DNA of 64,000 nt, from positions 62,001-126,000 of the IMG/VR virus record IMGVR_UViG_3300032293_002041. One strand, written 5' to 3'. Numbering within the stretch: the first letter of the stretch is position 1; each line of letters begins with the position of its first letter. Below the pieces are notes generated by a model. It ran no database searches and was not told the DNA's origin. It saw nothing but the letters and a program-made list of their open reading frames with translations. The position numbers and the translations under genes are program-made. Positions 32,984-61,100 of the stretch are shown here, piece by piece.

Positions 32984-33400
32984 ATGTCTGATCAATATTT
33001 ATCAAATTATTCTAACGGTAAAACTGTATCCGCAGCACAATTTATAACAGAAATTATTTGCGAAAGGAAAGCCCAGTCTACCAAGCAAGATTTACATTAT
33101 AGATTTTGGCTAGAAAAAAAATGGTCTGCTTTCTATAGGAACCAAATAGGATCAGCACATAAGTTGCTTAAAAAATACTCTTCTAAAGCTATCATAAGAG
33201 CATTGAATACTGATCAAGGAAGAAAAATCTATTCTTTGCGAGCACCACATCTTCCAGCTATTATAGAGAGTCAAGAACAAATTATCCAACAAGAAAATAC
33301 AGATCTTACTCTTCATATAGAGAGAAAAGAAAACATTTCTTTTGGTATTAAAAATCAATCAAAGAATATTATTTCTAAACTGAAGGACTTAGATCAATGA
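32984..33400 (+). CDS. Hypothetical protein
   Basis: ORF coupled to recA by an ATGA overlap. Confidence 0.6.
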   Translation: MSDQYLSNYSNGKTVSAAQFITEIICERKAQSTKQDLHYRFWLEKKWSAFYRNQIGSAHKLLKKYSSKAIIRALNTDQGRKIYSLRAPHLPAIIESQEQIIQQENTDLTLHIERKENISFGIKNQSKNIISKLKDLDQ

Positions 33401-35445
33401 GTTTAAAAGAAGATGTTATTAAGGATTTTGGTAATGAAATTATGCTAACAGCCAGCGCTGTTGTAGATAAAAAATTAATTACCATTCCAGTGAGTCCATC
33501 ATTAGACATTATATTGAATGGTGGTGTACCAGAAGGAAGCTTTATGATTTTAACTGGTCAACCAAAATGCGGCAAAGAGATGCCATTAAATAGCTTAATA
33601 TATACTCCCGATGGACCAAGAACAATGGGAGAAATGAAGGTTGGAACAGTAGTCTGTACTCCGGATGGTAATACTGCAAAAGTTATTGGAGTATATCCAC
33701 AGGGAAAGAAGGATATTTATAAGGTCACATTTAATGATGGTTCTTCAGCAGAGTGTGGATTAGAACACAACTGGACTGTTGCCAAAAATAATCGCAAAAG
33801 TGACTATGTAACGATAACCCTAGAAGAGATTATGAGCGAGGGGCTGAGATATAATGATCGTTGGAAGTGGAAGATTCCGTTAACAAAACCAGTTTACTTT
33901 AAACAGCAGAAGAAACTTATTCTTGATCCATATATTTTGGGTTGCTTGATTGGTGATGGTGGACTAACACAAAAGACCCCTAGATTCACAACTTCTGATA
34001 CCTTTATAGCAAGCAAGTTTAGAACTTTCTGTAAAAAAAGAGGACTATCTTTTAGGCATATTGATAAGTACGATTATTCTATTAGTGGTAATGTAGAGTC
34101 AAGTGTTATGGTAAAGAATACTCTAACCAGAGATCTGAAGAAACTAGGATTAATGGGTTGCGGGTCTCATGCCAAATTTATACCAACCGCATATAAGTAT
34201 GCTTCTGTGGCCAATAGACTATCTTTGGTTCGTGGACTAATGGATACCGATGGATATAATAGCAAAGGTAAAAGGGCAGAATATTCAACGGTATCACCAA
34301 GATTAGCTTCTGATGTTAGAGAACTTTTAGAGGGGTTGGGTTACTCTGTTGTGTCAACATTAAGAAATACTAACTGTAATAATAAGAGTTTTCTTTCATA
34401 TAGACTCTGTATTCATGGTAATGACATTAATCAACTATTCAGTTTACCTAGGAAAAAGACCAAGCACAAAAGAATCAAACCTGACTTGTGTAGGACTATT
34501 ATTGATGTGCAAAAGGTTTCTCGCGAAGAAGCCCAGTGCATAGAGATAGACCATAAGGATGGACTTTATTTAACTGATCGTTTTATTGTTACTCATAATA
34601 CCACAACATCTCTAGATTTCGCAGCAACCGCACAAAGACCAGAATATGCTTATAAAGAACTCAAAGAAGGAAGAGAGGTCTATTATCTCAATATTGAGGG
34701 TAGACTTAAGAAACGAGACCTAGAAGGCATCCCAGGACTTAATCTAGATAGATTTCACATCATTGGCTCTCAACAAGGCAAGATATTACATGCGGAAGAA
34801 TATCTCCAGATCGGAGAAAGAATCATAAATGAAATACCGGGATGCGTTCTAATTATAGACTCCTACTCTGCATTATGCACGGAAACAGAAATCACATCAG
34901 ATATGAGTAAAATGCAAAGAGCAGACGGAGCTAAGTTATTAGCTAAATTTTGTAGGAAAGTGGCTAATGTTATTCCTGTAAATAGGAATATCGTGGTAGG
35001 CATTACTCATCTTATGGGGAACCCTGGCACTGGTCATGTTGAATGGAAAGAAAAGAGTGGTCAAGCTATTGCTTATCAAACTGATATCAAGCTCAGAGCA
35101 CAATTCCACAGAGCATGGAAAATTGGAACATCAGAAGATGGTCAGCAGATTGGCCAGGAAATACAGTGGCAAGTTATTTGCTCTGCGTTGGGCGCTCCCG
35201 GCGGCACAATTACCAGCTACATTAGATATGGTCAGGGTATTGACAAGCAGATGGAACTATTAATGCTGGCAGCAGATATTGGATTGATACAAAAGGGTGG
35301 AGCTTGGTATACATTAACTTCAGTAGAAGATAAGCCTAAATTCCAAGGAACTGAAAAAGTCAGACAATATCTGGTTGACCATCCAGACGTTTATGAGAGC
35401 TTATTAGCACAAGTTAAAGAGACTATGGGCATTAAATGCAAATAA
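33397..35445 (+). CDS. recA: RecA/UvsX-like recombinase containing an intein
   Basis: SLDIILNGGVPEG, Walker A GQPKCGK|TTT interrupted by the intein, IIDS, IQKGGAWY. Confidence 0.88.
   Translation: MSLKEDVIKDFGNEIMLTASAVVDKKLITIPVSPSLDIILNGGVPEGSFMILTGQPKCGKEMPLNSLIYTPDGPRTMGEMKVGTVVCTPDGNTAKVIGVYPQGKKDIYKVTFNDGSSAECGLEHNWTVAKNNRKSDYVTITLEEIMSEGLRYNDRWKWKIPLTKPVYFKQQKKLILDPYILGCLIGDGGLTQKTPRFTTSDTFIASKFRTFCKKRGLSFRHIDKYDYSISGNVESSVMVKNTLTRDLKKLGLMGCGSHAKFIPTAYKYASVANRLSLVRGLMDTDGYNSKGKRAEYSTVSPRLASDVRELLEGLGYSVVSTLRNTNCNNKSFLSYRLCIHGNDINQLFSLPRKKTKHKRIKPDLCRTIIDVQKVSREEAQCIEIDHKDGLYLTDRFIVTHNTTTSLDFAATAQRPEYAYKELKEGREVYYLNIEGRLKKRDLEGIPGLNLDRFHIIGSQQGKILHAEEYLQIGERIINEIPGCVLIIDSYSALCTETEITSDMSKMQRADGAKLLAKFCRKVANVIPVNRNIVVGITHLMGNPGTGHVEWKEKSGQAIAYQTDIKLRAQFHRAWKIGTSEDGQQIGQEIQWQVICSALGAPGGTITSYIRYGQGIDKQMELLMLAADIGLIQKGGAWYTLTSVEDKPKFQGTEKVRQYLVDHPDVYESLLAQVKETMGIKCK
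33577..34599 (+). mobile_element. Class-3 intein with LAGLIDADG homing endonuclease (341 aa)
   Basis: Starts EMPLNSLIYTPDG and ends FIVTHN before +1 Thr. Block B EHNW, block F QCIEID, block G VTHN (W-C-T triplet). LGCLIGDG and RGLMDTDG motifs. Confidence 0.88.
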
Positions 35446-35855
35446 AAGATCTTGACGGCAATCTTTGCAATTGGCAACTCATTGGAGGCATTGCTCATGG
35501 TGCCGCTAAAAATAAATCTTCTTTGCATTTGACTGCTAGAGAATTAATACATAAATGCTTCCCAACTATGCAGATACTTGAGGAAGTAGCGATTCCTTTG
35601 AGAAGATCGGAAACTCTATATTTGGATTTTTATATACCTCTTTTAAAACGAACCGTCGAGGTGCATGGTGAACAACATTATAAGTTTACTCCATTTTATC
35701 ATAGCACATTATTAGGATTTGTAAAACACAAAAAAAGAGATCAGGAAAAACAAGAGTGGTGCGAAATAAATGGTATTTCATATATTGAATTACCTTTCAA
35801 CGAAAACGAAGAATCATGGTTAAATAGGATTAAAAATGAACAACAAAACAGCTAA
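35436..35855 (+). CDS. Vsr/DUF559-like PD-(D/E)XK endonuclease
   Basis: LYLDFYIP..VEVHGEQH, RDQEKQEWCE.NGI. Confidence 0.7.
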   Translation: MQIKDLDGNLCNWQLIGGIAHGAAKNKSSLHLTARELIHKCFPTMQILEEVAIPLRRSETLYLDFYIPLLKRTVEVHGEQHYKFTPFYHSTLLGFVKHKKRDQEKQEWCEINGISYIELPFNENEESWLNRIKNEQQNS

Positions 35856-39908: not shown

Positions 39909-40945
39909 TAACATATCTAAGAAGTAGTTCTTATGGCACTCACTCAATGTGTCCACAGCAATATTTTTTTGAATATATTCTTGGCTTAAGATCTCCGTCT
40001 AATAAAAAAGCTGACAAGGGGACTGTGGTGCATAAAGTTCTAGAGATATTGGCATATGTCAAACTTAATCAACAAAATAAAATAAATATTTTTGAAGACG
40101 ATGTTGTTGGTTCTGTGAATATTAATAATTACAGCTTAAATACGATCATAGAAAAAGTATATAAATACTATACCTCAAGATTCACCCACCACGAATGGGA
40201 CATAAAGGATTATAAAGATTGTCACGGATGGGTTTACAAAGCCCTAGAATACAATGGTGGCATGTTTGACCCTAGGAATAGGGACATAGTGCAGCCAGAG
40301 CAGCATTTTGACATAGAGATTAAAAAACCATGGTCTTCTTATAAATACGATACTAAAGATGGATTACTAGAAGGTAATTTAGCTATCAAGGGCACAATAG
40401 ATCTTATCACCAGGATTAATGATAAAACCTTAGAAGTAATAGACTGGAAGACTGGAAGAAGACTAGATTGGGCGACAGGAGAAGAAAAAACCCAAGAAAA
40501 GCTACAAAATGATCCTCAACTAAGAATATATCATTATGCTATACAACATTTATATCCAGAAATTGAGCATGTTATGATCTCTATTGATTTTATTAATGAC
40601 GGTGGGGCATTTACTATTTGTTTTGACAAAAGCGATCTTTTCAAAACAGAAATCATGCTTAAGAATAAATTTGAAACTATTAAGAATACACAAAAACCTC
40701 AACTTAATAAAACCTGGAAATGTACTAAGCTATGTCATTTTGGGAAAACAACATTTGAGAATACTTCCATAGCTCCAATAATAGAATACAGAGATAATCA
40801 GATAACACCAAAAGATAAGTGTATGACTAAGTGCGAGCAAGTAAAGCATGATATAGACACCAAAGGCACAGAAGTCGTGATTGACGAATATCAAACTCCG
40901 GGTTATAGTATTGGACACTACAAGGCACCCGGAAGCACCGCATGA
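39902..40945 (+). CDS. PD-(D/E)XK (Cas4/RecB-like) exonuclease, probable non-canonical start
   Basis: YLRSSSY...CP, GTVVHKVLE, KGTIDL, IDWKTG, QLRIY, C-terminal Cys cluster. The conserved N-terminal motif lies upstream of the first ATG (39947). Confidence 0.8.
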   Translation: MIITYLRSSSYGTHSMCPQQYFFEYILGLRSPSNKKADKGTVVHKVLEILAYVKLNQQNKINIFEDDVVGSVNINNYSLNTIIEKVYKYYTSRFTHHEWDIKDYKDCHGWVYKALEYNGGMFDPRNRDIVQPEQHFDIEIKKPWSSYKYDTKDGLLEGNLAIKGTIDLITRINDKTLEVIDWKTGRRLDWATGEEKTQEKLQNDPQLRIYHYAIQHLYPEIEHVMISIDFINDGGAFTICFDKSDLFKTEIMLKNKFETIKNTQKPQLNKTWKCTKLCHFGKTTFENTSIAPIIEYRDNQITPKDKCMTKCEQVKHDIDTKGTEVVIDEYQTPGYSIGHYKAPGSTA

Positions 40946-42816
40946 AAAATTATACTCCGCTCCATTGTCATTCGATGTATAGCTTATTGGATGGATTGTC
41001 TCAGCCAAAAACAATGGCCGAAAGATGTCAAGAAATTGGAGCATCTTCTTGCGCTCTAACAGATCATGGTAACATAGCCGGAACTGTTAAGTTTTATACT
41101 GAAATGAAAAAGCATGGTATCAAACCCATATTGGGTTGCGAGCTATATATTTGCAACGATAATCCATCAATACAAAGCAAAGAGAATAAAGATCTTAGTC
41201 ATTTTGTAATATTGGCAAAAAACTTTGAAGGATGGAAAAGCTTAATCAGAATAACTTCAGAGTCTAATAGGCCAGACTTCTATTATCACAAGCCGAGACT
41301 CAGCCTATCAACCCTAGCGCAGTTCTGCAACAACAATATTATTGGTTTTTGCGGACATGCTGGTTCAACTATAGCTGACAAGATTATGCTAGGAGAAAGT
41401 CTAAATCCAGATTGGAAAGAAATTGGCATTCAACAAATCGGCCTATATAGAGAGATATTTGGTAGAGACAATTTTTTTCTTGAAGCCCAATTAATGGATT
41501 CAGAAAACTCACCAATTCAGAAGATATTGACCGATGCGATGAGAGAGCTTGCAAAGCATACCTCTACCAAGATTATAGCCACACCAGACGCTCATTATTG
41601 CCGCAAGGAGGACGCAATTGATCAAAGAGTACTGCTGTGCAATAATTTAAAAACAACCTTCCCAGAGATCAGCAGGAAGATCACGAATGATGAGGAAGTT
41701 CCTCTTGGCTGCTTTTTTACATCTGACAACTTTCACATATTATCTCAGGAAGAAATACGATTATTTCACACAGAGGAAGAAATCGAGAACACCAATTTTG
41801 TGGCTAATTTATGTGAAGAATATAATATTTTGGATAAGCCACAATTACCACCATTTCCATGTCCAAACAATCTGGACGATGCTGAGTATCTGAGAGAATT
41901 ATGTAGAAACGGATGGAGAGAGAAAATTGCCAATGATATCCCAAAAGAAGACCATGGTAAGTATGTTGATAGGATTAAATATGAGCTTGATGTTTTACAG
42001 GGAGCTGGGCTATCAAGCTACTTTTTGATTGTGCAAGATATTGTGAATTATGTTAGGTCTAATAATTGGCTCCCAGGACCAGGAAGAGGAAGTGCTGCTG
42101 GTTGCTTAGTCTCTTATTTAATCGGTATTACTAGTATAGACCCGATTAAGTATAATCTTCTTTTCGATAGATTTTACAATGCTGGTCGTAATAGTAAAGA
42201 CCATATCTCAATGCCAGACATTGATGTGGACGTACCAATTAATAAAAGAGAAAATGTTATCGAATATATTAAACAGTGCTACGGAAAAGACAAGGTGTCT
42301 CAAATGATAACATTCAATACGATTAAAGGTAGAGGAGCTATCAAGGATGTCTTAAGAGTATATGGTAATATATCTTTTGATGAGATGAATAAAATTACTA
42401 AAAGTATTCCAGATGAGTCCAAAATTGCCGACGATCTTCAAGAAATGAAAGAAGAAACCGGAGAAGCATCAATTATTAGATGGGCTTTAGAAAATCAGCC
42501 AGATAAGCTTAGGGAGTGGTGTTTTATCGATGAAAAGAACGAATTACAAGGACCACTTGCAAAAAGATTTGAGCAGGCTATAAGATTGGAAGGCACCAAG
42601 TCTAATCAGTCCAAACATGCCGCTGGTATAGCCATTAGTGCCAATCCATTAAATATATCATGCCCAATGGTTTATGATTCAAAAAACGAACAGATGATAG
42701 CTGGCATGGAAATGCAAGATTTAGAATCGTTAGGTATAATTAAGTTTGATATTTTAGGTGTAGCGATGTTAGATAAAATTATGACTATTCGAGACATTTT
42801 AAGAACAGGAGAATAA
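40942..42816 (+). CDS. dnaE: DNA polymerase III alpha, N-terminal part (PHP + palm/thumb)
   Basis: LHCHSMYSLLDG, LTDHG, GPGRGSAAGCLV, MPDIDVD, KHAAG, KFDILG; the ORF stops shortly after. Confidence 0.92.
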   Translation: MKNYTPLHCHSMYSLLDGLSQPKTMAERCQEIGASSCALTDHGNIAGTVKFYTEMKKHGIKPILGCELYICNDNPSIQSKENKDLSHFVILAKNFEGWKSLIRITSESNRPDFYYHKPRLSLSTLAQFCNNNIIGFCGHAGSTIADKIMLGESLNPDWKEIGIQQIGLYREIFGRDNFFLEAQLMDSENSPIQKILTDAMRELAKHTSTKIIATPDAHYCRKEDAIDQRVLLCNNLKTTFPEISRKITNDEEVPLGCFFTSDNFHILSQEEIRLFHTEEEIENTNFVANLCEEYNILDKPQLPPFPCPNNLDDAEYLRELCRNGWREKIANDIPKEDHGKYVDRIKYELDVLQGAGLSSYFLIVQDIVNYVRSNNWLPGPGRGSAAGCLVSYLIGITSIDPIKYNLLFDRFYNAGRNSKDHISMPDIDVDVPINKRENVIEYIKQCYGKDKVSQMITFNTIKGRGAIKDVLRVYGNISFDEMNKITKSIPDESKIADDLQEMKEETGEASIIRWALENQPDKLREWCFIDEKNELQGPLAKRFEQAIRLEGTKSNQSKHAAGIAISANPLNISCPMVYDSKNEQMIAGMEMQDLESLGIIKFDILGVAMLDKIMTIRDILRTGE

Positions 42817-42818
42817 AT

Positions 42819-43016
42819 ATGGCAATTAAAAAATTTATGGAAGTTACTGTTGGTCAGACATTTAAGCTAAAAAACGAACAGGGTGCTGTAAATGATTATG
42901 TAAAACTTACAGAAGAAAGAATAAGTTGTTGTAAGGTTATAAATGCAGCATTACTAGCAGATCAAAATCAGCGGATTCAAGTTTTACCCTTAATAGAAGT
43001 AGAAGTAAACGACTAA
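42819..43016 (+). CDS. Small hypothetical protein
   Basis: AGGAG SD; 65 aa; lies between the dnaE halves. Confidence 0.6.
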   Translation: MAIKKFMEVTVGQTFKLKNEQGAVNDYVKLTEERISCCKVINAALLADQNQRIQVLPLIEVEVND

Positions 43017-43020
43017 ACTA

Positions 43021-43719
43021 ATGATTAACTATAATAAAATTTGCGTTTTCGATTTTGAGACAGATGGTTCTGATCCTCGTGTTTGTAGTCCAGTGCAAAT
43101 AGCATCTGTCATTATTGATCCAATTAAGCTTGAATTAGTTCCAAATTCTGAATTTAATATTTTCTTTAAACCAGATGTATTAGCTAAAGATGAAAATTAT
43201 GAATATACAACAGATATTCTGGACTTTCATGCCAAAGTCAAGGGATGTTCCAAGGACGATATTCTAAAAGAATGGAAAGCTTATCCTTCACAAGAACAAT
43301 CTTGGAAAATGTTTACAAATTATTTAGAAATGTATCATAGTAGGTCTTCTAAAAAGAGTCAATTTAGTGCTCCTATAGCTGCCGGTTATAATATTAATCG
43401 CTTTGACCTACCGATAGTAGATAGACTCAGTAATAAATATGGCAACGTCAACAAGGAATCAAAGAGTGATATCTTTTATCCTAGGGATGTGGTCGATATC
43501 ATGAATCTGATTTTCTATTGGTTTGAAAATAATGGTGACTTAAAAAGTTATAGTCTAGATTCATTAAGAGACTACTTTGGAATCTCTAAAGCAGGAGCAC
43601 ACGACGCATTGAAGGATGTGAAGGACTGTGCCGATATTTTAATTAGATTTCTTAGATTACATCGTAATTTAAGCAATAAGATCAAATTCAAGGACTCTTT
43701 CTCTACTAGCAATGTCTAA
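43021..43719 (+). CDS. DEDDh 3'-5' exonuclease (DnaQ/epsilon-like)
   Basis: FDFETDG, GYNINRFD, AHDALKD. Confidence 0.85.
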   Translation: MINYNKICVFDFETDGSDPRVCSPVQIASVIIDPIKLELVPNSEFNIFFKPDVLAKDENYEYTTDILDFHAKVKGCSKDDILKEWKAYPSQEQSWKMFTNYLEMYHSRSSKKSQFSAPIAAGYNINRFDLPIVDRLSNKYGNVNKESKSDIFYPRDVVDIMNLIFYWFENNGDLKSYSLDSLRDYFGISKAGAHDALKDVKDCADILIRFLRLHRNLSNKIKFKDSFSTSNV

Positions 43720-45340
43720 AAAATTTCAATATTCTTGCGGTTGTTCTTTTGATGTTCTTCCAGACTCTACGGATGAGCATATACATATCAACTTTGATCC
43801 AACGATAGAGCACATTCATTTGGATTGTTCTAAAACTTGGCAGTTGATTTCCGATGGAAATACCAAAGGGTGTTTTCAGCTGGAGTCTAGGTTAGGTAAA
43901 TCAATGGCTAAAAAGTTAAAGCCAGAAAATATAGAGCAGTTATCTGCGTTAATAGCCATTTTGAGGCCTGGGTGCTTGGAGGCAATGAGAGAAGGGAAAA
44001 GCGTTAGCAATCATTATATTGATAAAAAAAATGGTAAGGAGTCTGTAGACTACTATCATCCTGTACTAGAGGAGTCCTTAAAGAATACTTATGGAGAGAT
44101 GATTTATCAAGAGCAAGCTATGGAAATAGCTAGAACTGTTGCCGGTTTCGATCTTCAAGAAGCGGACATGTTAAGAAAAGCTATCGGCAAGAAGAAGCCT
44201 GAAGAAATGGCAAAAATTAAAGTTAAATTCATTAAAGGATGCGAAAAGGTAGGCACGGTATCAGTTGATCAGGCAGAAGAAATATTCGGATGGATCGAAA
44301 AATCTCAAAGATACTCATTCAATAAGTCCCACTCTGTATCATATGCAATAAATGCATACTTATCGGCATTTGCAAAAGCACATTTTCCCAAGATATTTTT
44401 CGCCTCATACCTAAGATTTGCGAAAGATAAGATTGATCCAAAAGCAGAGATTAAAGAGTTAGTACAAAACGCTAGCGAAATGGATGTTTCAGTATCAATA
44501 CCAGATATCAGAAATCTTAATAAACTATTTGTACTAAAGAATGAAAAAATCTATTTTGGTTTAACTGATATTAAAGGCTTTGGACAATCAGTATTTGATA
44601 AACTAATCAATATCAAAAATACTAAGCACTTGGATTTCGAAACGATGAATTGGATAGAAATGTTATTGCAAGTATTAATGAACATAAACTCCATATCTGC
44701 AAAAGCATTGATACAGAGTGGGTCTTTGTCTTATTTAAATAAAAGTAGGGCATGTATGTTATTTGAATTTAATCTAGCTTCTGAACTAACTAAGAAAGAG
44801 GCTGAATTCATACTCATTAATATACAGAAATATAAGTCTTTAGGTGATGGCTTATATGATCTATACCATAATGGTAAATCAAACAAGAATAGAAAATCAA
44901 TAATATTAGGATTAATCAATAACTATAATAAGCCACCCCACTCTTTGGAAGATAATCCAGAATGGATTTCCGACACAGAGGATGAGATACTGGGATGCAG
45001 CATCACCTGTTCTAAAGTAGATATGTATGATATTACTATGACGAACACAACATGTAAAGATTTCAAAACATCATTAATGAGCGATAACCTTATCTTGTGC
45101 GGTGAGATCGATAATCTTAGTGTTACTAAGACTAAGACAGGCAAAAATCCTGGACTAGAAATGTCTTTTGTTACATTGAGCGATGGGACTGGAGTTCTGG
45201 ACTCTGTTATTTTCTTTCCAGAAGCATACAAGGCTTATAGAAATATTTTATTCCAAGGCAATGTTATCATAGTTAAGGGTAGCAGATCAAAGAACGGCGA
45301 TTCGTTTATCGTAGAAAAAACTTATATTCCAAAGACTTGA
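43712..45340 (+). CDS. dnaE: DNA polymerase III alpha, C-terminal part (fingers, HhH, OB)
   Basis: TKGCFQLES, LRPG, TYGEMIYQEQ, ADMLRKAIGKK, YSFNKSH, GLTDIKGFG, MSFVTLSDGTG. Confidence 0.92.
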   Translation: MSKKFQYSCGCSFDVLPDSTDEHIHINFDPTIEHIHLDCSKTWQLISDGNTKGCFQLESRLGKSMAKKLKPENIEQLSALIAILRPGCLEAMREGKSVSNHYIDKKNGKESVDYYHPVLEESLKNTYGEMIYQEQAMEIARTVAGFDLQEADMLRKAIGKKKPEEMAKIKVKFIKGCEKVGTVSVDQAEEIFGWIEKSQRYSFNKSHSVSYAINAYLSAFAKAHFPKIFFASYLRFAKDKIDPKAEIKELVQNASEMDVSVSIPDIRNLNKLFVLKNEKIYFGLTDIKGFGQSVFDKLINIKNTKHLDFETMNWIEMLLQVLMNINSISAKALIQSGSLSYLNKSRACMLFEFNLASELTKKEAEFILINIQKYKSLGDGLYDLYHNGKSNKNRKSIILGLINNYNKPPHSLEDNPEWISDTEDEILGCSITCSKVDMYDITMTNTTCKDFKTSLMSDNLILCGEIDNLSVTKTKTGKNPGLEMSFVTLSDGTGVLDSVIFFPEAYKAYRNILFQGNVIIVKGSRSKNGDSFIVEKTYIPKT

Positions 45341-54669: not shown

Positions 54670-55135
54670 GTCCCCACTTATCAGCCGGACACTTTTGATC
54701 TTTGTGCGCCAATTTATTTTGATGATTTGCTTCTCTAATAACAGTACATCCGCACAATAAACAAGAACTATTTTGAAAATATTCACAAGAATTACATACG
54801 CTTAGTCTTTGTTCTATTTGTTCAGCAGAGCAGAGGTTATCTGGATTGTCATTATTTTGAGCTTTTAAGTATTGCTGTTTTGTATTGTCTGCAATTTTAT
54901 TTAGGATAACATCAGACATATTCTGATTCTCTGAAAGATGTTCTACTGAAGATTCTTGTCCTCTATGAACCTGTTGAATCTTATTAGTAATATCTTCCAT
55001 TTTTTTAAAGCATAAAATTTTGGTATCCGGTATTTCAAGACCAACGGTTAAGCCACAATAATTACATTTATACAGTGGCTTATCGTTAAAGAATGTATTT
55101 AATGGCTGAAGATCACAGTAGCTGGAGTTATGCAT
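54659..55135 (-). CDS. Cys-rich zinc-binding hypothetical protein
   Basis: ATG 55135; CNYCG, RLSVCNSC...CLLCGC...CPADKW. Confidence 0.65.
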   Translation of the reverse strand: MHNSSYCDLQPLNTFFNDKPLYKCNYCGLTVGLEIPDTKILCFKKMEDITNKIQQVHRGQESSVEHLSENQNMSDVILNKIADNTKQQYLKAQNNDNPDNLCSAEQIEQRLSVCNSCEYFQNSSCLLCGCTVIREANHQNKLAHKDQKCPADKWGPIV

Positions 55136-58100
55136 ATTCCACCTTATTAGCTTGGCAACATCCTTTATCATCATTACATTTTGACGCTCCGGTATTATAG
55201 CATGATGGAGCAATATCGCAATCAGTAGTTTTATAAGTAGAAGATAGTCTAATATTAGAATTAATACATGATGTCGCTCTTTCATTACATTTGATAGAAG
55301 TATCTACGCCTTTTAAAATATCTTGAATAGTTTTAGGTCTTCTATATTTATATGTATAATACGCTACTCTAACAGGTAATTCAACGCTGACTAATGCTGG
55401 ATCACCTAAAGTAGCCCTATAGTTAATTGCTGGGTATGTTATAATACCAAAACTTAGTTTACTACAAGTGCCTGGAACCACACCTTCAACTATATCATTT
55501 ATTTCATACTTATCTTTATTATTCTTACAAACAGCTATATTATTATAAGCTTGTTCCATGTTGGCTTCCCATTCTTTATTTAACTCGCCATTAGCTCCGG
55601 CTGAACCTTGCTCAAACTGTACTTCAGTTTCACACCCGGCAATAGCATGTTCTATATTTCCTCCTACAACAATTGCTGAAGCTTTGGAAATACAAGTATG
55701 CCATGGAAAAGAATCCGGTGCTGATTTTCCACATTGTCCTATTCCACATGTTGTTACAGTAAAACCATTACAGGCATTAGGATCTGGCAGCGTTCCACAA
55801 AATTGTTTAGCTACTGTTTGACATCCTCCGATTGGTGTCGGCCCATCTTGATTCGGATTTCCTTGTACTAAATACCCTAACACACATGTTCTAGTTTCTG
55901 TTATGATATCCCATGACGGATGCTGATTTATCATAGCTGCTTGATTAGGCTCAACCCCGCAGTCAGAACACTCGCTATTAATAGAATCAACTACACTAAA
56001 GCTATCATCTGGAACTGTTATCGTTATAGAAGGACAATCAGATCTTATTGAATTAGGAATACATTTTGATACTCCACCAGCTAAAGAAATTGTAAGATTA
56101 TTATTATCATAAGATATATTGCATAGTTGTGTAGAACATGAGGGTGAATATCTATTATATTGAATAGTTGTATTTTTATTATAAATATAGTAAGTTTCTG
56201 GATTAGAAATCTGACAAGACATCCAACCACACTGTTCTGTTATAGTTAGTTTATTTGAGGTTGTGGGACTCGCTCTCAAAGCAATATCGGATCGTGGAGG
56301 TATCGGATCTGTAATTATATTTGGATTAGACAAATAACCTACAAGTTTTCTCTTGTAGCCTTTTAATGTAATAGAATGTCTACAATATTCAAAGGTATAA
56401 TCAAAATCGGTATATTCATAATTTAATGATTTACAAGCACAGTCATTAATTTTGTCAGAACTTCTACAATACCCATATTCATAATTAGAACATTCACATG
56501 CGTCCGAAGTGCTGGTTGGAGATGGTGGCCAATCTCTATTTGCTAGATTATTAAATCGTTTTTTGTCTTCATCATCTAATAAAGTAAAACATGTCCCGCA
56601 AGTAGAAGATTCGTATCTGGGATTTAGTGGGAAAGTACCCACATCGGGTATTGTAGTAGATCTAATCATACTTTCTATGGGTCCACCATTTCTGAATGTT
56701 AAGTCATTATTGGGATTTGTAGACCCACCACGATTAACGCATCCCCTAAAGACTCCTCTAGCATAACCAGGAGAACTAACATCTATAGTAACTATTTTAG
56801 ACGATAATACTGTGCAGTTAGAAGCAATCGGATCAATTGGACCAACACCTCTGTTAGTACATTCTAGATAAGGGAAACTATTGGTATTAGCACAAGCATC
56901 ATGGTCCACAAAATAAATACTGGGTATATTTTGATCTCCTGGTGGAACGTTTGGATCAGTTGAACATATCGGTTTATAATATGGTGCTCCAAAGTTACAT
57001 TTTTTACCTTTAGGGTTATTTGAATCTGCCCAAAAAGGAAAACTAAAAGTTTCTATTTCGTTGGAACATCCAATAGTTTCGATCTCTGCTCTTATAATTT
57101 TATTAATTAAATTGAATGCTTTTTGTGGTCGCTCTTTGCATCTTCCTATTTCATTATATGTTTCCAGATTATTAGCTGGAGATAGTGGTTGTGTAGATAC
57201 TACTAAACTAGTATTTGTAATAGATTCTGAGTATATTATTGACTCTAAATCACTATGATTAGATATTGTCGCTATTGCCTTGATTTTGCCATCAGTCCTT
57301 ACGATTTTAATAGTAATTGATAAATTATTAATAGATATATCGACAACTTTACCTACTGCTAAAATACCATTAATGTTTATTGAGCCATTAATTTTTCTAT
57401 TTGAGGTATCAGCACTTATATCTAAGTCATATGGAATATTTTTGTATACATCTTTAGCTTCAATTTTAGGATAGGAATATCTTAAAAAATCTATAAGAGT
57501 TAATGGTTTTTCTGAATTATCAATTCTTTGTAGATTAATTTTCTGTTGTTCACCATATAAAAGCCTAAATAACATTTCATTAGCTAAAATATCAGTATTA
57601 TTGACAATACTAGTATGATCAGAAACTATGCTATTCGATAATAAAGATTGATATTCAGGATTTAATATGGAATATTTTTCTGTTGCTGGCCTTGGCCCAA
57701 CAGATGGATCACAATTTGACTCTGGATACAAAATATTGTTCGGCTGTAATTCAAATCTTTGAATATATTTAATGCCAGTATTACCAATAATATTATATAG
57801 TCCAGCATCATAAGATAACATGAAAGGAATATTATCCGGAATATTTTCGATATTTTTTTCTTTTTCTTTATTGATAGCATATTCTGCTTTTAATGTTGTC
57901 CAACCAACAGTATTAATGCCACACCTAAAACTACCACATCCGCTAACAGCATCTGTATCACAATATACTGGATATCTAGCAAAAATATCTCCAGTGAATG
58001 ATATAGTATTGAAGGAGTTAAAATCAAAAACATCTGTAAATGTAGTATTATTATAAGTTGGTACAGAAGCCCTAAATGTATTCCTGCACATTGATGTGTC

Positions 58101-61100
58101 TGGAGAAAGATTTCCTGATGAATTTAATGCTGATAATCTAAAAGGAGGATCATCTATTCTCAGAGTATTAGAATAAAAAGAACTATTGTTATTAATAGAT
58201 ATTGCTGATTTTAATTTATTATTTGTATTAAGATTAATCCAAAAATATCTAGTACTGTTTGTTGGTTTAAAAGACCCCCACGTATGATCTGATGCAAGAT
58301 TTTTATAAAGTCCACTAACTATTACTTTGCCTTGTAATAATTTATCTTGAGAAAATTTTTGCTGAATAATATCAGTTAATCTTGGTCTGAAGTCCTGAGT
58401 CTGCATTCCTGGGGCTGGAATAAAATTTAAATCTATCAAAGGTAAATAATTGTCCTGAGAGTGAAAATCTTTTTTAGTTAAATAGTTATCACTTCCAAGG
58501 TTATATTTTTGATGAATAGTATAATATACTAGACCAGTATAAGATACTGGAATGTTACTAGCGCTTTCTGGCTTAATAATATAGTTAAAAATGTTATAGT
58601 TATTATTATTAATAATTATCTTATTAAATAAATTATTATATTGCGATAATGGGTAATTATTATGAATAACGCTAGATGAATATATATAGTTACTTAATTC
58701 GCTATTAAGCTTATTATCAAAATCAATTAAATCTGCCCATTTAGTAGAAAAAAGAGGATTATGTAAAAAAGTATCTAGCTCTTTTTTAACTAGTGGATTA
58801 AAATTTCTATAAAGAATAAGAGAGTCCACTCCATTAGGGTTTGTATAGTCTTTATGTAATCTAGAAAAATCTAAATCAACATTATCATATTTTAATTTTC
58901 TATCTAATTTAAATCGAGTATATATTTTAATATATTGATCTGGATTGATAGAATTAAAAGATAGCATACGACCATACTTATCAGTATTATAGCAATAGAT
59001 AGACTTCTCTATAATTTTGGCAGTATGTTTTTGTTTATTGTTGTCTTTATTAATAACTGTTATTTCTTGATCACAAAAGAGTCTGGTTCCATAAATATAA
59101 TTAATTTTGTTTTTAAGAATATAATTAATATTCAGATCGCTAAAGTTTTGATATAGGTAATTATAATCTGTTAATTGATAAGAAGATAGAGAGATTTTGT
59201 TTCCTCCAAGATATCTCCATCTATCTCCATTACTTAATAAAACCACTGGTCTACTATCCACATCAATTAAAGCTTGTTCATCTTCGCTAAGAGATTCAAT
59301 AGAGTCGTGTATGGAAACAACAGGATTATCTTTTTCTGAAACATAAAAATATGATCTAGGACCTTCAACGTTTACAATATCCGGTTTGTTTGGGTCTATG
59401 TGAGCTGACACAAGACATAACGGATATGTGTCGATGTTGTAGTCTAGAACACTCATTCCTGTGGGCTTATGGTTATACAGGAAATCGAATTCTATGGGTT
59501 CTTTAGGAGCAGATGGTAACCACGGGCCTTGTAAATAGCTTTTTTCTTCTGAAGATAAATATTCAAACATAAAAGGCTCGCCAATATATCGATTTTCTTT
59601 ATTAAAAAACCCAAAAGTATTGGGGTTATCATACAAATACCATCCATCTTGTAATTGTAGATATAGTCTTAATTTTCTATGGTCCGATGAACCACCAACT
59701 TGAGTAAGTATTCTTTCAATATCGCTATTTAATTCTCCAATTAAAACTAATCCACTTGGATATAGTGCTTCTGGTCTGAATTTATCTTTTTCATAGTCTA
59801 TATAATAAGAGTGCGACTGCGAATCCTTATATATTGGAGTCAAATTATGGTATTTGTTTTCGAAAGAAAGTCCACTATTAGGATGAAAAAATCCTTTCCT
59901 TAAATTCCCTAATTGAGTATATGAAGGGATAGAAAAGTTTAGAATTTGTTTTCTCGGCACTCGGCTAAATTTAATAGGTACTGAACTAATCTCATCGCCC
60001 CGTGTGCTAAAAATATTGTTAGTTTCACAGATAGTCCCTGTTGGCGGATATAGATAAAATTCATCTCCCAATAATCCTTCTAGATAAGGATTGTTCAGGC
60101 CTATACTAACGCTAGAAGACGAACCCCCTCCTTTACCAATAAATACTTTTTTCTGTTGATCGTACATGGTAATATTATCATTTAAATTTACTTTAGTAGC
60201 AAATCTTTGAAACCCTAAATTAGGAGTAGCTATTAATTCTCCAGTCTCAGAATCTGTACTAAAATTATTAGTTTTAAATAAATTTACACCCTCAAGCACT
60301 TCAGCCCAAACATCTGCATGGGTAGTATTGTAAGAAGGCAAAGTTACTGTCCAATTAGTAGAAGCATAATTATTTAATGTAATAGTAACAGATTTCTCGC
60401 ATCCATAGGGATTCAATGGATCAATTTTAGCATTCACAGATGACAATAGAGAGTTAGCTGTTGGATGGTTTGGTATTATATTAGATGTAATAGACGACAA
60501 TCTATTTCTAAGAGTTTCTAATTCCTCAGAAAGGCCTCTTAATCGACTTTGTAATAATTCTAAATCATCTAAGTTAGTGATAGAAATAATTTGCTCATTA
60601 ATTACTAAAATTTCTGATTCTTTTCTAGATATATCTTCTAAAATTTTAGAACCACCAAATAGTTCTGCTAATTTATTTAAAGAATAGCCTCCATATGCTT
60701 TTAATCTTGGGCTATTTTGTGTAGAAAGTGCTGGAGTATATAATACTTTATCCTGATTAGTATATGTAATAGAGGTTGATGAGCTACATCGATATGGATA
60801 ATCAGTTACATTGCTTAAGTTAAAACATTTGCAACTATCTTTAATTGGAAAAGCTTTGCAGGAATAACTATCCTCCGCTGGGCCTCTAATCTTTTCAATA
60901 GAAATATTATATATTTTTATTCCAACGTCCCTAGTATTAAAGGTAAGAGACAATTGACCTCCATTAATACCACTAAATAAAGACGTAGTATTATTTACAA
61001 ATACTGTACTACCGCTAATTGCTCCAAGAGGACTACAAGTATAATAAATTCCACCCTGACTATGAAATGCTAATCTATCAATATGGGGATTGAAAGCAGC

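What the first reader, a model, noticed from the sequence alone, without database searches (positions are those of the whole stretch)
33577..34599. Class-3 intein starting with Glu, inserted in the RecA Walker A motif
Seen: removing 341 aa restores GQPKCGK-TTT. The intein begins with Glu rather than Cys/Ser, has the class-3 W(B)-C(F)-T(G) triplet, ends His-Asn before Thr+1, and has two LAGLIDADG motifs. Known: class-3 inteins start splicing with the block-F Cys and tolerate non-nucleophilic first residues, usually Ala. An acidic first residue in a phage RecA P-loop looks unusual to me. Splicing would gate recombinase activity.
Basis: partly seen in the sequence, partly recalled or inferred. 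Interest (0 to 1): 0.62.

Follow-up and report, generated by a model that had tools for sequence, protein, structure and literature searches.

The report
Class-3 intein in phage RecA P-loop
A 229-kb phage carries a self-splicing, mobile protein insert (a class-3 intein with its own homing endonuclease) in the ATP-binding loop of its RecA recombinase; the insert is real and precisely bounded, but its glutamate first residue is common in this intein family, so it is an ordinary new member of a known kind.

Summary
Window 33577-34599 (+) is a 341-aa in-frame insert in a 682-aa RecA-like ORF (33397-35445). It sits between the Walker A Lys and Thr (GQPKCGK|TTT). Of 80 related viral loci, 74 have the uninterrupted GQPKCGKTTTSL and 6 carry an intein at the same codon, which fixes the boundaries at Glu1 and Asn341/Thr+1. 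The Cys of CGK is therefore extein.

The insert has the full class-3 signature: non-nucleophilic residue 1, His B:10, Trp B:12, Cys F:4, Thr-His-Asn and Thr+1. These positions are invariant or nearly so in 121 homologues. It also has a LAGLIDADG endonuclease domain with both catalytic Asp residues. The AlphaFold model (pLDDT 91.6) matches PI-SceI-type inteins.

Residue 1 varies widely in the family: Ala 48, Glu 25, Leu 13, Ser 10, Met 7, Asp 7, and at least 39 changes on the intein tree. Glu1 is the second commonest state, not an oddity. This lability next to an invariant block-F Cys is comparative support for class-3 chemistry.

The RecA/RadA P-loop is a published intein hotspot. Splicing was not tested. 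Purifying selection on intein and exteins argues that it splices.

Verdict: new member of a known kind, low-to-moderate interest.

The parts
33397..33576 (+). N-extein of the RecA-like recombinase (60 aa, ends GQPKCGK, the Walker A motif up to the invariant Lys)
   Evidence: [quoted passage not shown] In L002 this stretch aligns to E. coli RecA GPESSGK.
33577..34599 (+). Intein, 341 aa, Glu1 to Asn341: a HINT splicing domain split by a LAGLIDADG homing endonuclease domain
   Evidence: The 1023-nt insert is absent from 74 of 80 related loci. PHROG and Pfam hits. AF2 model with pLDDT 91.6 and pTM 0.90. Foldseek best matches are PI-SceI (E 1e-17), the TliVMA and PhoVMA inteins and PI-PfuI.
33577..33579 (+). 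Codon of intein residue 1, Glu (GAG), non-nucleophilic
   Evidence: Aligns to residue 1 (C1A) of the gp41-1 intein in 6riz. The column has 9 residue types in RecA hosts, entropy 2.70 bits against a median of 1.68, and at least 39 changes on the tree.
33766..33774 (+). Block B His64 (B:10), Asn65, Trp66 (B:12)
   Evidence: His in 121 of 121 and Trp in 120 of 121 homologues. Trp aligns to the grafted F65W of gp41-1_WCT.
33904..34476 (+). LAGLIDADG homing endonuclease domain (about residues 110-300), with catalytic Asp127 (33955-33957) and Asp225 (34249-34251)
   Evidence: Pfam LAGLIDADG_3 and Hom_end. Aligns to the PI-SceI endonuclease domain, including GDG and DSDG. Asp127 is kept in 115 of 121 and Asp225 in 116 of 121 homologues.
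34537..34539 (+). Block F position 4 Cys321 (TGC), the predicted initiating nucleophile
   Evidence: Cys in 121 of 121 homologues. Aligns to the grafted D107C of gp41-1_WCT. It lies 20 residues before the terminal Asn, against 21 in the Msm DnaB-1 class-3 intein (Cys118/Asn139, PMC5222942).
34591..34599 (+). Block G Thr339-His340-Asn341 (G:5-G:7)
   Evidence: All three are in 121 of 121 homologues. The MP-Be DnaB prototype has the same numbering, T339/H340/N341 (PMC2807308).
34600..35445 (+). C-extein of RecA (281 aa plus stop). It starts with Thr+1, which is both the Walker A Thr and the +1 nucleophile.
   Evidence: Pfam RecA (114-262 of 262) and RecA_C; TIGR02012 at E 4e-21. +1 is Thr in 104 and Ser in 17 of 121 homologues.

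Best explanation
The insert is a mobile class-3 intein with an intact-looking LAGLIDADG homing endonuclease. It lies between Lys and Thr of the Walker A (P-loop) motif of the RecA-like recombinase of a 229-kb freshwater-type jumbo phage. The inferred mechanism follows the established class-3 pathway. The precursor is translated with its ATP site interrupted. Cys321 (block F:4), assisted by His64 and Trp66 (block B), attacks the Lys60-Glu61 peptide bond and takes the N-extein as a thioester (block-F branched intermediate). Thr+1 then takes it over (block-G branched intermediate). Asn341 cyclises with help from His340 and Thr339 and releases the intein. An O-N shift restores GQPKCGK-TTT and so an active RecA. 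The Glu1 side chain has no chemical role. At the DNA level the endonuclease would cut intein-free recA alleles of co-infecting relatives and copy the intein in (homing). What is shown here: the boundaries, the signature residues and their conservation, the fold, the patchy distribution and purifying selection. What is inferred: the chemistry of splicing, endonuclease activity and homing.
For: Boundaries: 74 of 80 related loci have contiguous GQPKCGK|TTTSL, and 6 of 80 have an intein at the same codon.

Class-3 signature: residue 1 is non-nucleophilic. His B:10, Cys F:4, Thr G:5, His G:6 and Asn G:7 are in 121 of 121 homologues, Trp B:12 in 120 of 121, and +1 is Thr or Ser in 121 of 121. The block assignment was checked against the solved gp41-1_WCT structure, where residue 1, Trp, Cys and THN align column for column. 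The nearest solved HINT domains include the class-3 Msm and Mch DnaB-1 inteins.

Residue 1 behaves as a non-catalytic position: 10 residue types, at least 39 changes on a 121-tip tree built from residues 4-341, and above-median entropy beside invariant catalytic columns.

Functionality: dN/dS of the intein is 0.08 against L041. The exteins give 0.01-0.02 against intein-free alleles and 0.04 (C-extein) to 0.15 (60-codon N-extein) against L041. The ORF is intact in a genome rated 100% complete, with direct terminal repeats.

Mobility: the closest recA alleles (97% aa) are empty. Between the window and L041 the intein is more alike than its host gene (nt identity 82.5% against 74.8%; dS 0.98 against about 3.2). 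Related inteins sit in the GK|T P-loops of PhoH, DnaB, Snf2 and terminase genes, including in cultured phages.

The class-3 definition and mechanism come from PMC2807308, PMC4031507 and PMC5222942.
Against: No biochemical evidence exists for this protein. Splicing, the block-F branched intermediate and endonuclease activity are all inferred from sequence.

Block B position 7 is Gly here (Gly 61, Cys 28, Ser 14, Thr 10, Asp 7 in the family), not the Thr of standard inteins. The class-3 prototype does not need B:7 (PMC2807308).

The closest solved relative by sequence is gp41-1, a class-1 intein, so family membership alone does not fix the mechanism. Two homologues begin with Cys and ten with Ser while keeping W/C/T, so the family may not be mechanistically uniform.

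In the prototype, substitutions of residue 1 reduced splicing and caused cleavage (PMC2807308), so residue 1 may not be fully neutral.

Confidence: 0.85

Rival explanations
1. Glu1 has a special role. The acidic first residue, next to the P-loop Lys-1 and His B:10, would tune or condition splicing, for example through sensitivity to pH, metal or nucleotide, so that the phage gates its recombinase. On this reading Glu1 is an adaptation and not drift.
For: Acidic residues make up 32 of 121 first residues and recur at least 18 times on the tree, which could reflect repeated selection. Substitutions of residue 1 changed the balance of splicing and cleavage in the MP-Be DnaB prototype (PMC2807308). 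Conditional splicing is documented for P-loop inteins in Pho RadA and Msm DnaB (PMC4513877, PMC6195587).
Against: Close relatives (80-93% identical inteins in the same recA site) carry Glu, Leu, Phe or Ala at residue 1, and residues 2-3 vary as well. This pattern fits relaxed constraint better than a specific role. No other column was tested for co-variation with the acidic state.
Confidence: 0.08
2. The intein is dead or poorly splicing, so this recA is effectively inactivated. The phage would rely on host RecA or another recombinase, and the insert would persist as a selfish remnant.
For: Splicing is untested. Class-3-like pseudo-inteins exist (Arsp-FB24 Arth_1007, PMC3196547). Most relatives (74 of 80) do without the intein.
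Against: Every catalytic position is intact and invariant. The Arthrobacter pseudogene lacks Cys F:4, whereas this intein has it. dN/dS is 0.08 for the intein. The exteins give 0.04 (C-extein) and 0.15 (60-codon N-extein) against the intein-bearing L041, and 0.01-0.02 against empty alleles. A dead recA would not stay under such constraint.
Confidence: 0.05
3. The intein splices by another route: direct attack of Thr+1 on the N-terminal junction (class-2-like), or a shifted boundary that uses the upstream Cys of CGK as a class-1 nucleophile.
For: A Cys lies three residues upstream of the junction. Class-2 inteins also lack a nucleophile at residue 1.
Against: Intein-free alleles keep the Cys within GQPKCGK-TTT, so it is extein, and it is replaced by Ser, Thr, Ala, Val and others in other hosts. 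According to PMC4031507, all known class-2 inteins are KlbA orthologues with Ala1, Ser G:6, Asp F:4 and Cys+1. This intein has His G:6, Cys F:4 and Thr+1.
Confidence: 0.02

Closest known systems
Mycobacteriophage Bethlehem DnaB intein (MP-Be DnaB), the class-3 prototype (PMC2807308)
   Same: It is phage-encoded, and PMC2807308 states that most class-3 inteins sit in ATPase P-loops. It has a non-nucleophilic residue 1, the W/C/T triplet and Thr+1. It is also 341 aa and ends T339-H340-N341, and it carries a LAGLIDADG endonuclease (PMC5050341).
   Different: The host gene is a DnaB-type helicase, not RecA. Residue 1 is Pro, not Glu. Sequence similarity to the window's intein was not measured directly, because no sequence of it was in hand.
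P-loop class-3 inteins beginning AQPL in cultured phages (Klebsiella N1M2 and Methanosarcina MetMV terminases, Vibrio YC primase-helicase, Proteus phage 10 helicase, Clostridium phi8074-B1 and others)
   Same: 35-40% identity over the full 341 aa. Same insertion logic, GK|...THN|T. Same block A (xQPLxSxxxTPxG), block F (xxCIxxD) and THN.
   Different: Different host genes. Residue 1 is Ala (7 of 8) or Leu (1 of 8) in the eight sampled. None sits in a RecA.
RadA/RecA P-loop inteins, insertion point c (Pyrococcus horikoshii RadA c1, bacterial RecA c2) (PMC4513877)
   Same: Same superfamily of host protein and the same position at the end of the P-loop. The precursor's ATP site is interrupted until splicing.
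   Different: The Pho RadA intein is treated in PMC4031507 within the class-1 mechanism, and PMC4513877 describes no variant class for it; its first residue was not checked here. That paper reports little similarity between inteins at this site, implying independent invasions. Whether the bacterial c2 inteins are class 3 was not determined here.
Mycobacterium smegmatis DnaB-1 (DnaBi1) and M. chimaera DnaB-1 class-3 mini-inteins (6bs8, 6rix; PMC6195587, PMC7664689)
   Same: Class-3 signature and P-loop insertion. Their HINT domains are matched by sequence and by fold.
   Different: They are mini-inteins without an endonuclease and sit in bacterial DnaB. DnaBi1 has a demonstrated Cys48-Cys118 redox toggle; nothing equivalent is shown here.
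gp41-1 intein (cyanophage-like, 6qaz; WCT-grafted variant 6riz)
   Same: It is the best sequence match among solved structures (profile E 5e-20). It shares the THN end and the conserved Cys one position before B:7.
   Different: It is a class-1 split mini-intein with Cys1, Phe B:12 and Asp F:4.
PI-SceI (VMA1 intein) and the TliVMA and PI-PfuI bifunctional inteins
   Same: Same overall two-domain architecture, HINT plus LAGLIDADG endonuclease. Best whole-model fold matches (Foldseek E 1e-17 to 3e-10).
   Different: Class-1 chemistry, different hosts, 13-18% identity.

Membership tests
Intein (HINT splicing domain) | An in-frame insert in a conserved host protein whose precise removal restores the host sequence | tested here: met
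   74 natural intein-free alleles read GQPKCGK|TTTSL with a 0-nt gap. The window has a 1023-nt in-frame insert at that point. The empty allele L002 is a full-length RecA.
Intein (HINT splicing domain) | Blocks A, B, F and G with His B:10, penultimate His, terminal Asn and a +1 Cys/Ser/Thr; HINT fold | tested here: met
   H64, H340, N341 and T+1 are present and invariant. The AF2 model (pLDDT 91.6) matches solved inteins.
Intein (HINT splicing domain) | Actual protein splicing | not testable with these tools
   Supported only indirectly, by purifying selection on the intein and both exteins.
Class 3 inteins (Tori et al. 2010, PMC2807308) | No Cys/Ser/Thr nucleophile at intein residue 1 | tested here: met
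   Residue 1 is Glu. In the family it is non-nucleophilic in 107 of the 119 homologues with a residue in that column.
Class 3 inteins (Tori et al. 2010, PMC2807308) | Trp at block B:12, Cys at block F:4 and Thr at block G:5 (the WCT triplet) | tested here: met
   W66, C321 and T339 are present. They occur in 120, 121 and 121 of 121 homologues. Positions were verified by alignment to gp41-1_WCT (F65W, D107C).
Class 3 inteins (Tori et al. 2010, PMC2807308) | Ser or Thr at +1 | tested here: met
   Thr+1 is present. The family has Thr 104 and Ser 17.
Class 3 inteins (Tori et al. 2010, PMC2807308) | [quoted passage not shown] | not testable with these tools
   Needs expression and mutagenesis with C321A, T+1A and N341A.
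Class 3 inteins (Tori et al. 2010, PMC2807308) | Membership of the monophyletic class-3 clade | tested here: inconclusive
   Class-3 DnaB mini-inteins are among the nearest solved structures, but the class-1 gp41-1 scores higher. [quoted passage not shown]
LAGLIDADG (DOD) homing endonuclease, intein-borne | Two LAGLIDADG motifs, each with a catalytic acidic residue; alpha-beta-beta-alpha-beta-beta-alpha fold | tested here: met
   LIGDGG (D127) and LMDTDG (D225). Pfam LAGLIDADG_3 at 6.6e-9. Aligns to the PI-SceI endonuclease domain and matches I-DmoI and PI-SceI folds.
LAGLIDADG (DOD) homing endonuclease, intein-borne | Site-specific cleavage of the intein-free allele | not testable with these tools
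   Only patchy distribution and intein/extein discordance are shown.
RecA family recombinase (host protein) | RecA ATPase core with Walker A GxxxxGKT and the RecA C-terminal domain | tested here: met
   Pfam RecA and RecA_C are above the gathering score in the window's exteins and cover the full length (10-262 of 262) in the empty allele L002. L002 aligns to E. coli RecA with GQPKCGKTT opposite GPESSGKTT. It scores below the TIGR02012 equivalog cut-off (75.6 against 325 bits), so it is a divergent phage RecA-like protein.

The most novel reading that the evidence does not exclude
The extreme turnover of intein residues 1-3, with acidic residues arising repeatedly, may not be drift. It could be adaptive tuning of splicing rate or of conditional splicing in phage recombinases. 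Candidate mechanisms are a Glu1/Lys-1 interaction at the scissile bond, or a redox or metal trap between the catalytic Cys321 and the conserved Cys60 or the extein Cys at -3. Different phage lineages would then set different delays or stress-dependence for RecA activation.
Probability: 0.08. Interest if true: 0.55.

Novelty: new member of a known kind. Interest (0 to 1): 0.24.

Why it matters
On its own this is a routine annotation. A phage recA that automated pipelines call 'RecA/RadA recombinase' or 'intein/homing endonuclease' is in fact an intein-interrupted gene whose product needs splicing.

Two points go slightly beyond that. First, the family offers a large natural mutagenesis series at intein residue 1 (A, E, L, S, M, D, F, G, C, P) on otherwise closely similar class-3 inteins at one insertion site. 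That is useful for asking how residue 1 affects class-3 splicing, and for engineering inteins that tolerate any junction residue. Second, a phage clade in which about 1 in 13 sampled recA alleles is occupied, with near-identical empty alleles available, is a good system for studying intein homing dynamics among co-infecting jumbo phages.

Tried and rejected
1. I looked for a published list of class-3 first residues. The supplementary tables of PMC2807308 are not held. Tori & Perler 2011 (PMC3133030) is not held. Text searches for Glu1 or glutamate at position 1 of class-3 inteins found nothing relevant. I therefore cannot say whether Glu1 was ever tabulated in InBase. The statement that it is common rests on my own count.

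2. I sampled eight cultured-phage relatives for Glu1 and found none (7 Ala, 1 Leu). Glu1 is so far documented here only in metagenomic sequences.

3. No close cultured relative of the host RecA exists in the phage collection; all hits were below 30% identity.

4. Composition: the intein's GC (0.35-0.38) is not distinct from its surroundings, so base composition gives no sign of recent arrival.

5. I wanted the distance from Cys321 to the scissile bond in the model, but the coordinates are not exposed.

The natural intein-free allele L002:2821-3843 was used by reference instead.

7. The upstream Cys as nucleophile was rejected.

8. The reads tools, the representative-protein search and the complex predictor were not used.
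Full report
**What is there**

The window holds one long ORF at 33397-35445 (+), 682 aa. Its first 60 residues end in GQPKCGK. Residues 61-401 (window 33577-34599, exactly 1023 nt) run from Glu-Met-Pro-Leu... to ...Ile-Val-Thr-His-Asn. The remaining 281 residues start Thr-Thr-Thr-Ser-Leu.

Pfam places RecA (positions 114-262 of the model) and RecA_C in the C-terminal part, both above the gathering score. It places LAGLIDADG_3 in the middle part. PHROGs matches the middle part to intein-bearing terminase, helicase-loader and primase families (E 2e-34 to 2e-16) and the C-terminal part to 'UvsX-like recombinase'. NCBIfam gives recA at E 4e-21 but far below the equivalog cut-off, so the host protein is a divergent, phage-type RecA.

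The window is bases 62001-126000 of a 228,972-bp virus record with direct terminal repeats, rated 100% complete. This intein family occurs only once in it. Neighbouring genes form a replication module: class II ribonucleotide reductase, DnaB-type helicase, a Toprim-domain (primase-like) protein and Pol III alpha.

**The boundaries are fixed by natural empty alleles**

A scan of viral contigs with the C-extein returned 528 relatives, of which the best 80 were kept.
- In 74 of these 80, the N-extein and C-extein matches abut with no gap and read ...GQPKCGK|TTTSL.
- In the window's own contig (L001) and in L041, L043, L067 and L074, the gap is 1023-1038 nt and ends ...IVTHN|TTT. L068 is cut off upstream and holds only that C-terminal junction.
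- The closest empty alleles (L002-L004) are 100% identical in the N-extein and 97% in the C-extein at protein level.

The intein is therefore exactly Glu1...Asn341 with Thr+1, and the Cys in CGK belongs to the host protein. I did not build a joined extein sequence. Instead I used the natural empty allele L002:2821-3843 by reference. It is a full-length RecA (Pfam RecA 10-262 of 262 plus RecA_C). It aligns to E. coli RecA with GQPKCGKTT opposite GPESSGKTT. The insertion point therefore corresponds to the bond between the Walker A Lys and Thr.

**Class-3 signature and its conservation**

A word-based search with the intein region found 1974 proteins. I aligned the window's protein with the 120 listed hits, 121 rows in all.

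| Position | Residue in window | State among 121 rows |
|---|---|---|
| His B:10 | H64 | 121/121 |
| Trp B:12 | W66 | 120/121 |
| Cys F:4 | C321 | 121/121 |
| Thr G:5 | T339 | 121/121 |
| His G:6 | H340 | 121/121 |
| Asn G:7 | N341 | 121/121 |
| +1 | Thr | Thr 104, Ser 17 |

The block assignment does not rest on memory. A profile of 61 family members aligns to the solved gp41-1 'WCT' variant (6riz; C1A, F65W, D107C). Intein residue 1 lies on residue 1, the family Trp on W65, the family Cys on C107, and THN on THN. The class-3 Msm and Mch DnaB-1 inteins are also among the nearest solved sequences. The spacing also agrees with a characterised class-3 intein: H64/W66 and C321-to-N341 of 20 residues here, against H65/W67 and C118-to-N139 of 21 residues in Msm DnaB-1 (PMC5222942). 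The prototype MP-Be DnaB intein is likewise 341 aa with T339/H340/N341 (PMC2807308). These are the sequence features that define class 3 (PMC2807308, PMC3196547, PMC4031507).

**Is Glu1 unusual?**

No. In the same 121 rows, residue 1 is Ala 48, Glu 25, Leu 13, Ser 10, Met 7, Asp 7, Phe 3, Gly 3, Cys 2 and Pro 1. Among the 95 that sit in RecA-like hosts, it is Ala 29 and Glu 23.

Inteins 80-93% identical to this one, at the same site, begin EMP, LQR, FLK or ANK. On a FastTree of intein residues 4-341 (all 121 rows kept; the 2 rows with a gap at residue 1 were not counted), residue 1 needs at least 39 changes. The Glu state alone needs at least 16. Its column entropy in RecA hosts is 2.70 bits, against a median of 1.68, next to invariant catalytic columns.

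A class-1 intein would show the reverse pattern. This lability, together with the invariant block-F Cys, is the best comparative evidence available here that the family uses class-3 chemistry.

Eight cultured-phage relatives have Ala1 (7) or Leu1 (1), all at GK|...THN|T. These were the terminases of Klebsiella N1M2 and Methanosarcina MetMV, the helicase of Proteus phage 10, the primase-helicase of Vibrio YC, and genes of Clostridium phi8074-B1, Aeromonas AerS_266 and two further Vibrio phages. I found no published table of class-3 first residues to compare with.

**Is the site unusual?**

No. Tori et al. noted that most class-3 inteins lie in ATPase P-loops of helicase-like and terminase proteins (PMC2807308). 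Kelley et al. call Lys|Thr the 'classic' P-loop insertion (PMC5050341). [quoted passage not shown]

**Fold**

AlphaFold2 was run on the 61-sequence alignment, covering the intein plus 8 flanking residues on each side. It gave mean pLDDT 91.6 and pTM 0.90. Foldseek against the PDB ranks the following:
- PI-SceI first (E 1e-17, TM about 0.7), then the TliVMA and PhoVMA inteins and PI-PfuI.
- I-DmoI for the endonuclease half.
- MchDnaB-1, gp41-1 and Msm DnaB-1 for the HINT half.

Both LAGLIDADG motifs keep their catalytic Asp: D127 in 115 of 121 and D225 in 116 of 121.

**Is it alive, and does it move?**

Between the window and L041, which both carry the intein:

| Segment | dN/dS | nt identity | dS |
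|---|---|---|---|
| Intein | 0.08 | 82.5% | 0.98 |
| C-extein | 0.04 | 74.8% | about 3.2 (saturated) |

Against the empty alleles the exteins give dN/dS of 0.01-0.02. Such constraint on both the insert and the interrupted recA is hard to reconcile with a non-splicing precursor.

The intein is more similar between these two phages than the gene it sits in, and the nearest recA alleles are empty. Both fit horizontal homing, with the caveat that the extein dS is saturated. Base composition gives no sign of recent arrival.

**Mechanism**

Shown here: exact boundaries, signature residues, fold, conservation pattern and patchy distribution.

Inferred from the established class-3 pathway (PMC2807308, PMC4031507, PMC5222942):
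1. Cys321 attacks the Lys60-Glu61 bond.
2. The N-extein passes to Thr+1.
3. Asn341 cyclises and releases the intein.
4. An O-N shift restores the Walker A motif.

Until then the ATP site is interrupted, as argued for P-loop inteins in RadA and DnaB (PMC4513877, PMC6195587). Whether splicing is conditional is unknown. The family has a conserved second Cys (Cys60, 115 of 121) and many hosts have Cys at -3. That makes a redox trap like that of Msm DnaBi1 conceivable, but it is untested.

**Rivals**

- A special role for Glu1 is possible, since residue-1 substitutions altered the splicing/cleavage balance in the prototype. The free interchange among close relatives disfavours it.
- A dead intein is disfavoured by the selection data and the intact catalytic set.
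- A shifted boundary using the upstream Cys is excluded by the empty alleles.
- A class-2 route is disfavoured by His G:6, Cys F:4 and Thr+1.

**Verdict**

Its mechanistic label is well supported by sequence, fold and comparative data. The reason it was flagged, an odd acidic first residue in an odd place, does not hold. This is a new member of a known kind. It belongs to a large family of class-3 inteins hosted in recA that I did not find described in the searched literature. In the best 80 viral loci it occupies about 1 allele in 13.

Noticed in passing
window 40942-42816 (+) and 43712-45340 (+), with ORFs 42819-43016 and 43021-43719 between them: The Pol III alpha (DnaE) gene is split into two ORFs. 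The first has PHP plus the NTPase domain (624 aa); the second has the finger, HHH and OB domains (542 aa). Between them lie a 65-aa ORF of unknown function and a 232-aa ORF that matches PHROG 'DNA polymerase exonuclease subunit' (E 4e-23). No intein halves are evident at the break, since the Pfam domain ends 18 residues before the stop. This could be a natural two-subunit polymerase with an embedded proofreading gene.
   Followed up: partly
window 35436-35855 (+): A 139-aa ORF overlaps the recA stop. It matches PHROG 'homing endonuclease' and 'HNH endonuclease' families (E 1e-15) but has no Pfam hit. It is present at the same position in all 80 related loci, and its divergence tracks that of recA. 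It behaves as a conserved syntenic partner of recA, not as a sporadic mobile element.
   Followed up: partly
intein residues 1-3 (window 33577-33585) and homologues P0005-P0124: Residues 2 and 3 of the intein also turn over quickly (at least 21 and 29 changes on the tree). There are about 40 different opening tripeptides (AQP, EQP, LQR, ANK, EMP, FLK, DLA and others), whereas residues 8-14 (IYTPDGP) are conserved. The cause is unexplained; it could be relaxed constraint, tuning, or recombination at the homing junction.
   Followed up: partly
homologues P0048 and P0107: Two RecA-hosted family members begin with Cys1 (and ten with Ser1) while keeping Trp B:12, Cys F:4 and THN. These are the kind of 'WCT inteins with an N-terminal nucleophile' whose class was left open in PMC2807308.
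   Followed up: no
intein Cys60 (window 33754-33756), one position before block B:7: A second Cys is conserved in 115 of 121 family members and is also present in gp41-1. Its role is unknown. It is a candidate partner for the catalytic Cys321 in a redox or metal trap.
   Followed up: no
window 55128-63278 (-): A giant ORF of 2716 aa lies on the opposite strand to almost all other long ORFs in the window. It was not examined.
   Followed up: no
homologues (for example P0047, P0062-P0069, P0075, P0081-P0090): The same intein family (34-41% identity) sits in the GK|x P-loop of PhoH-like proteins of 900-1150 aa. Several of these appear to carry a second intein of the family further downstream: a second GVYPQGK-type block near residue 470-530 and additional intein-related Pfam domains in the listing.
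   Followed up: no
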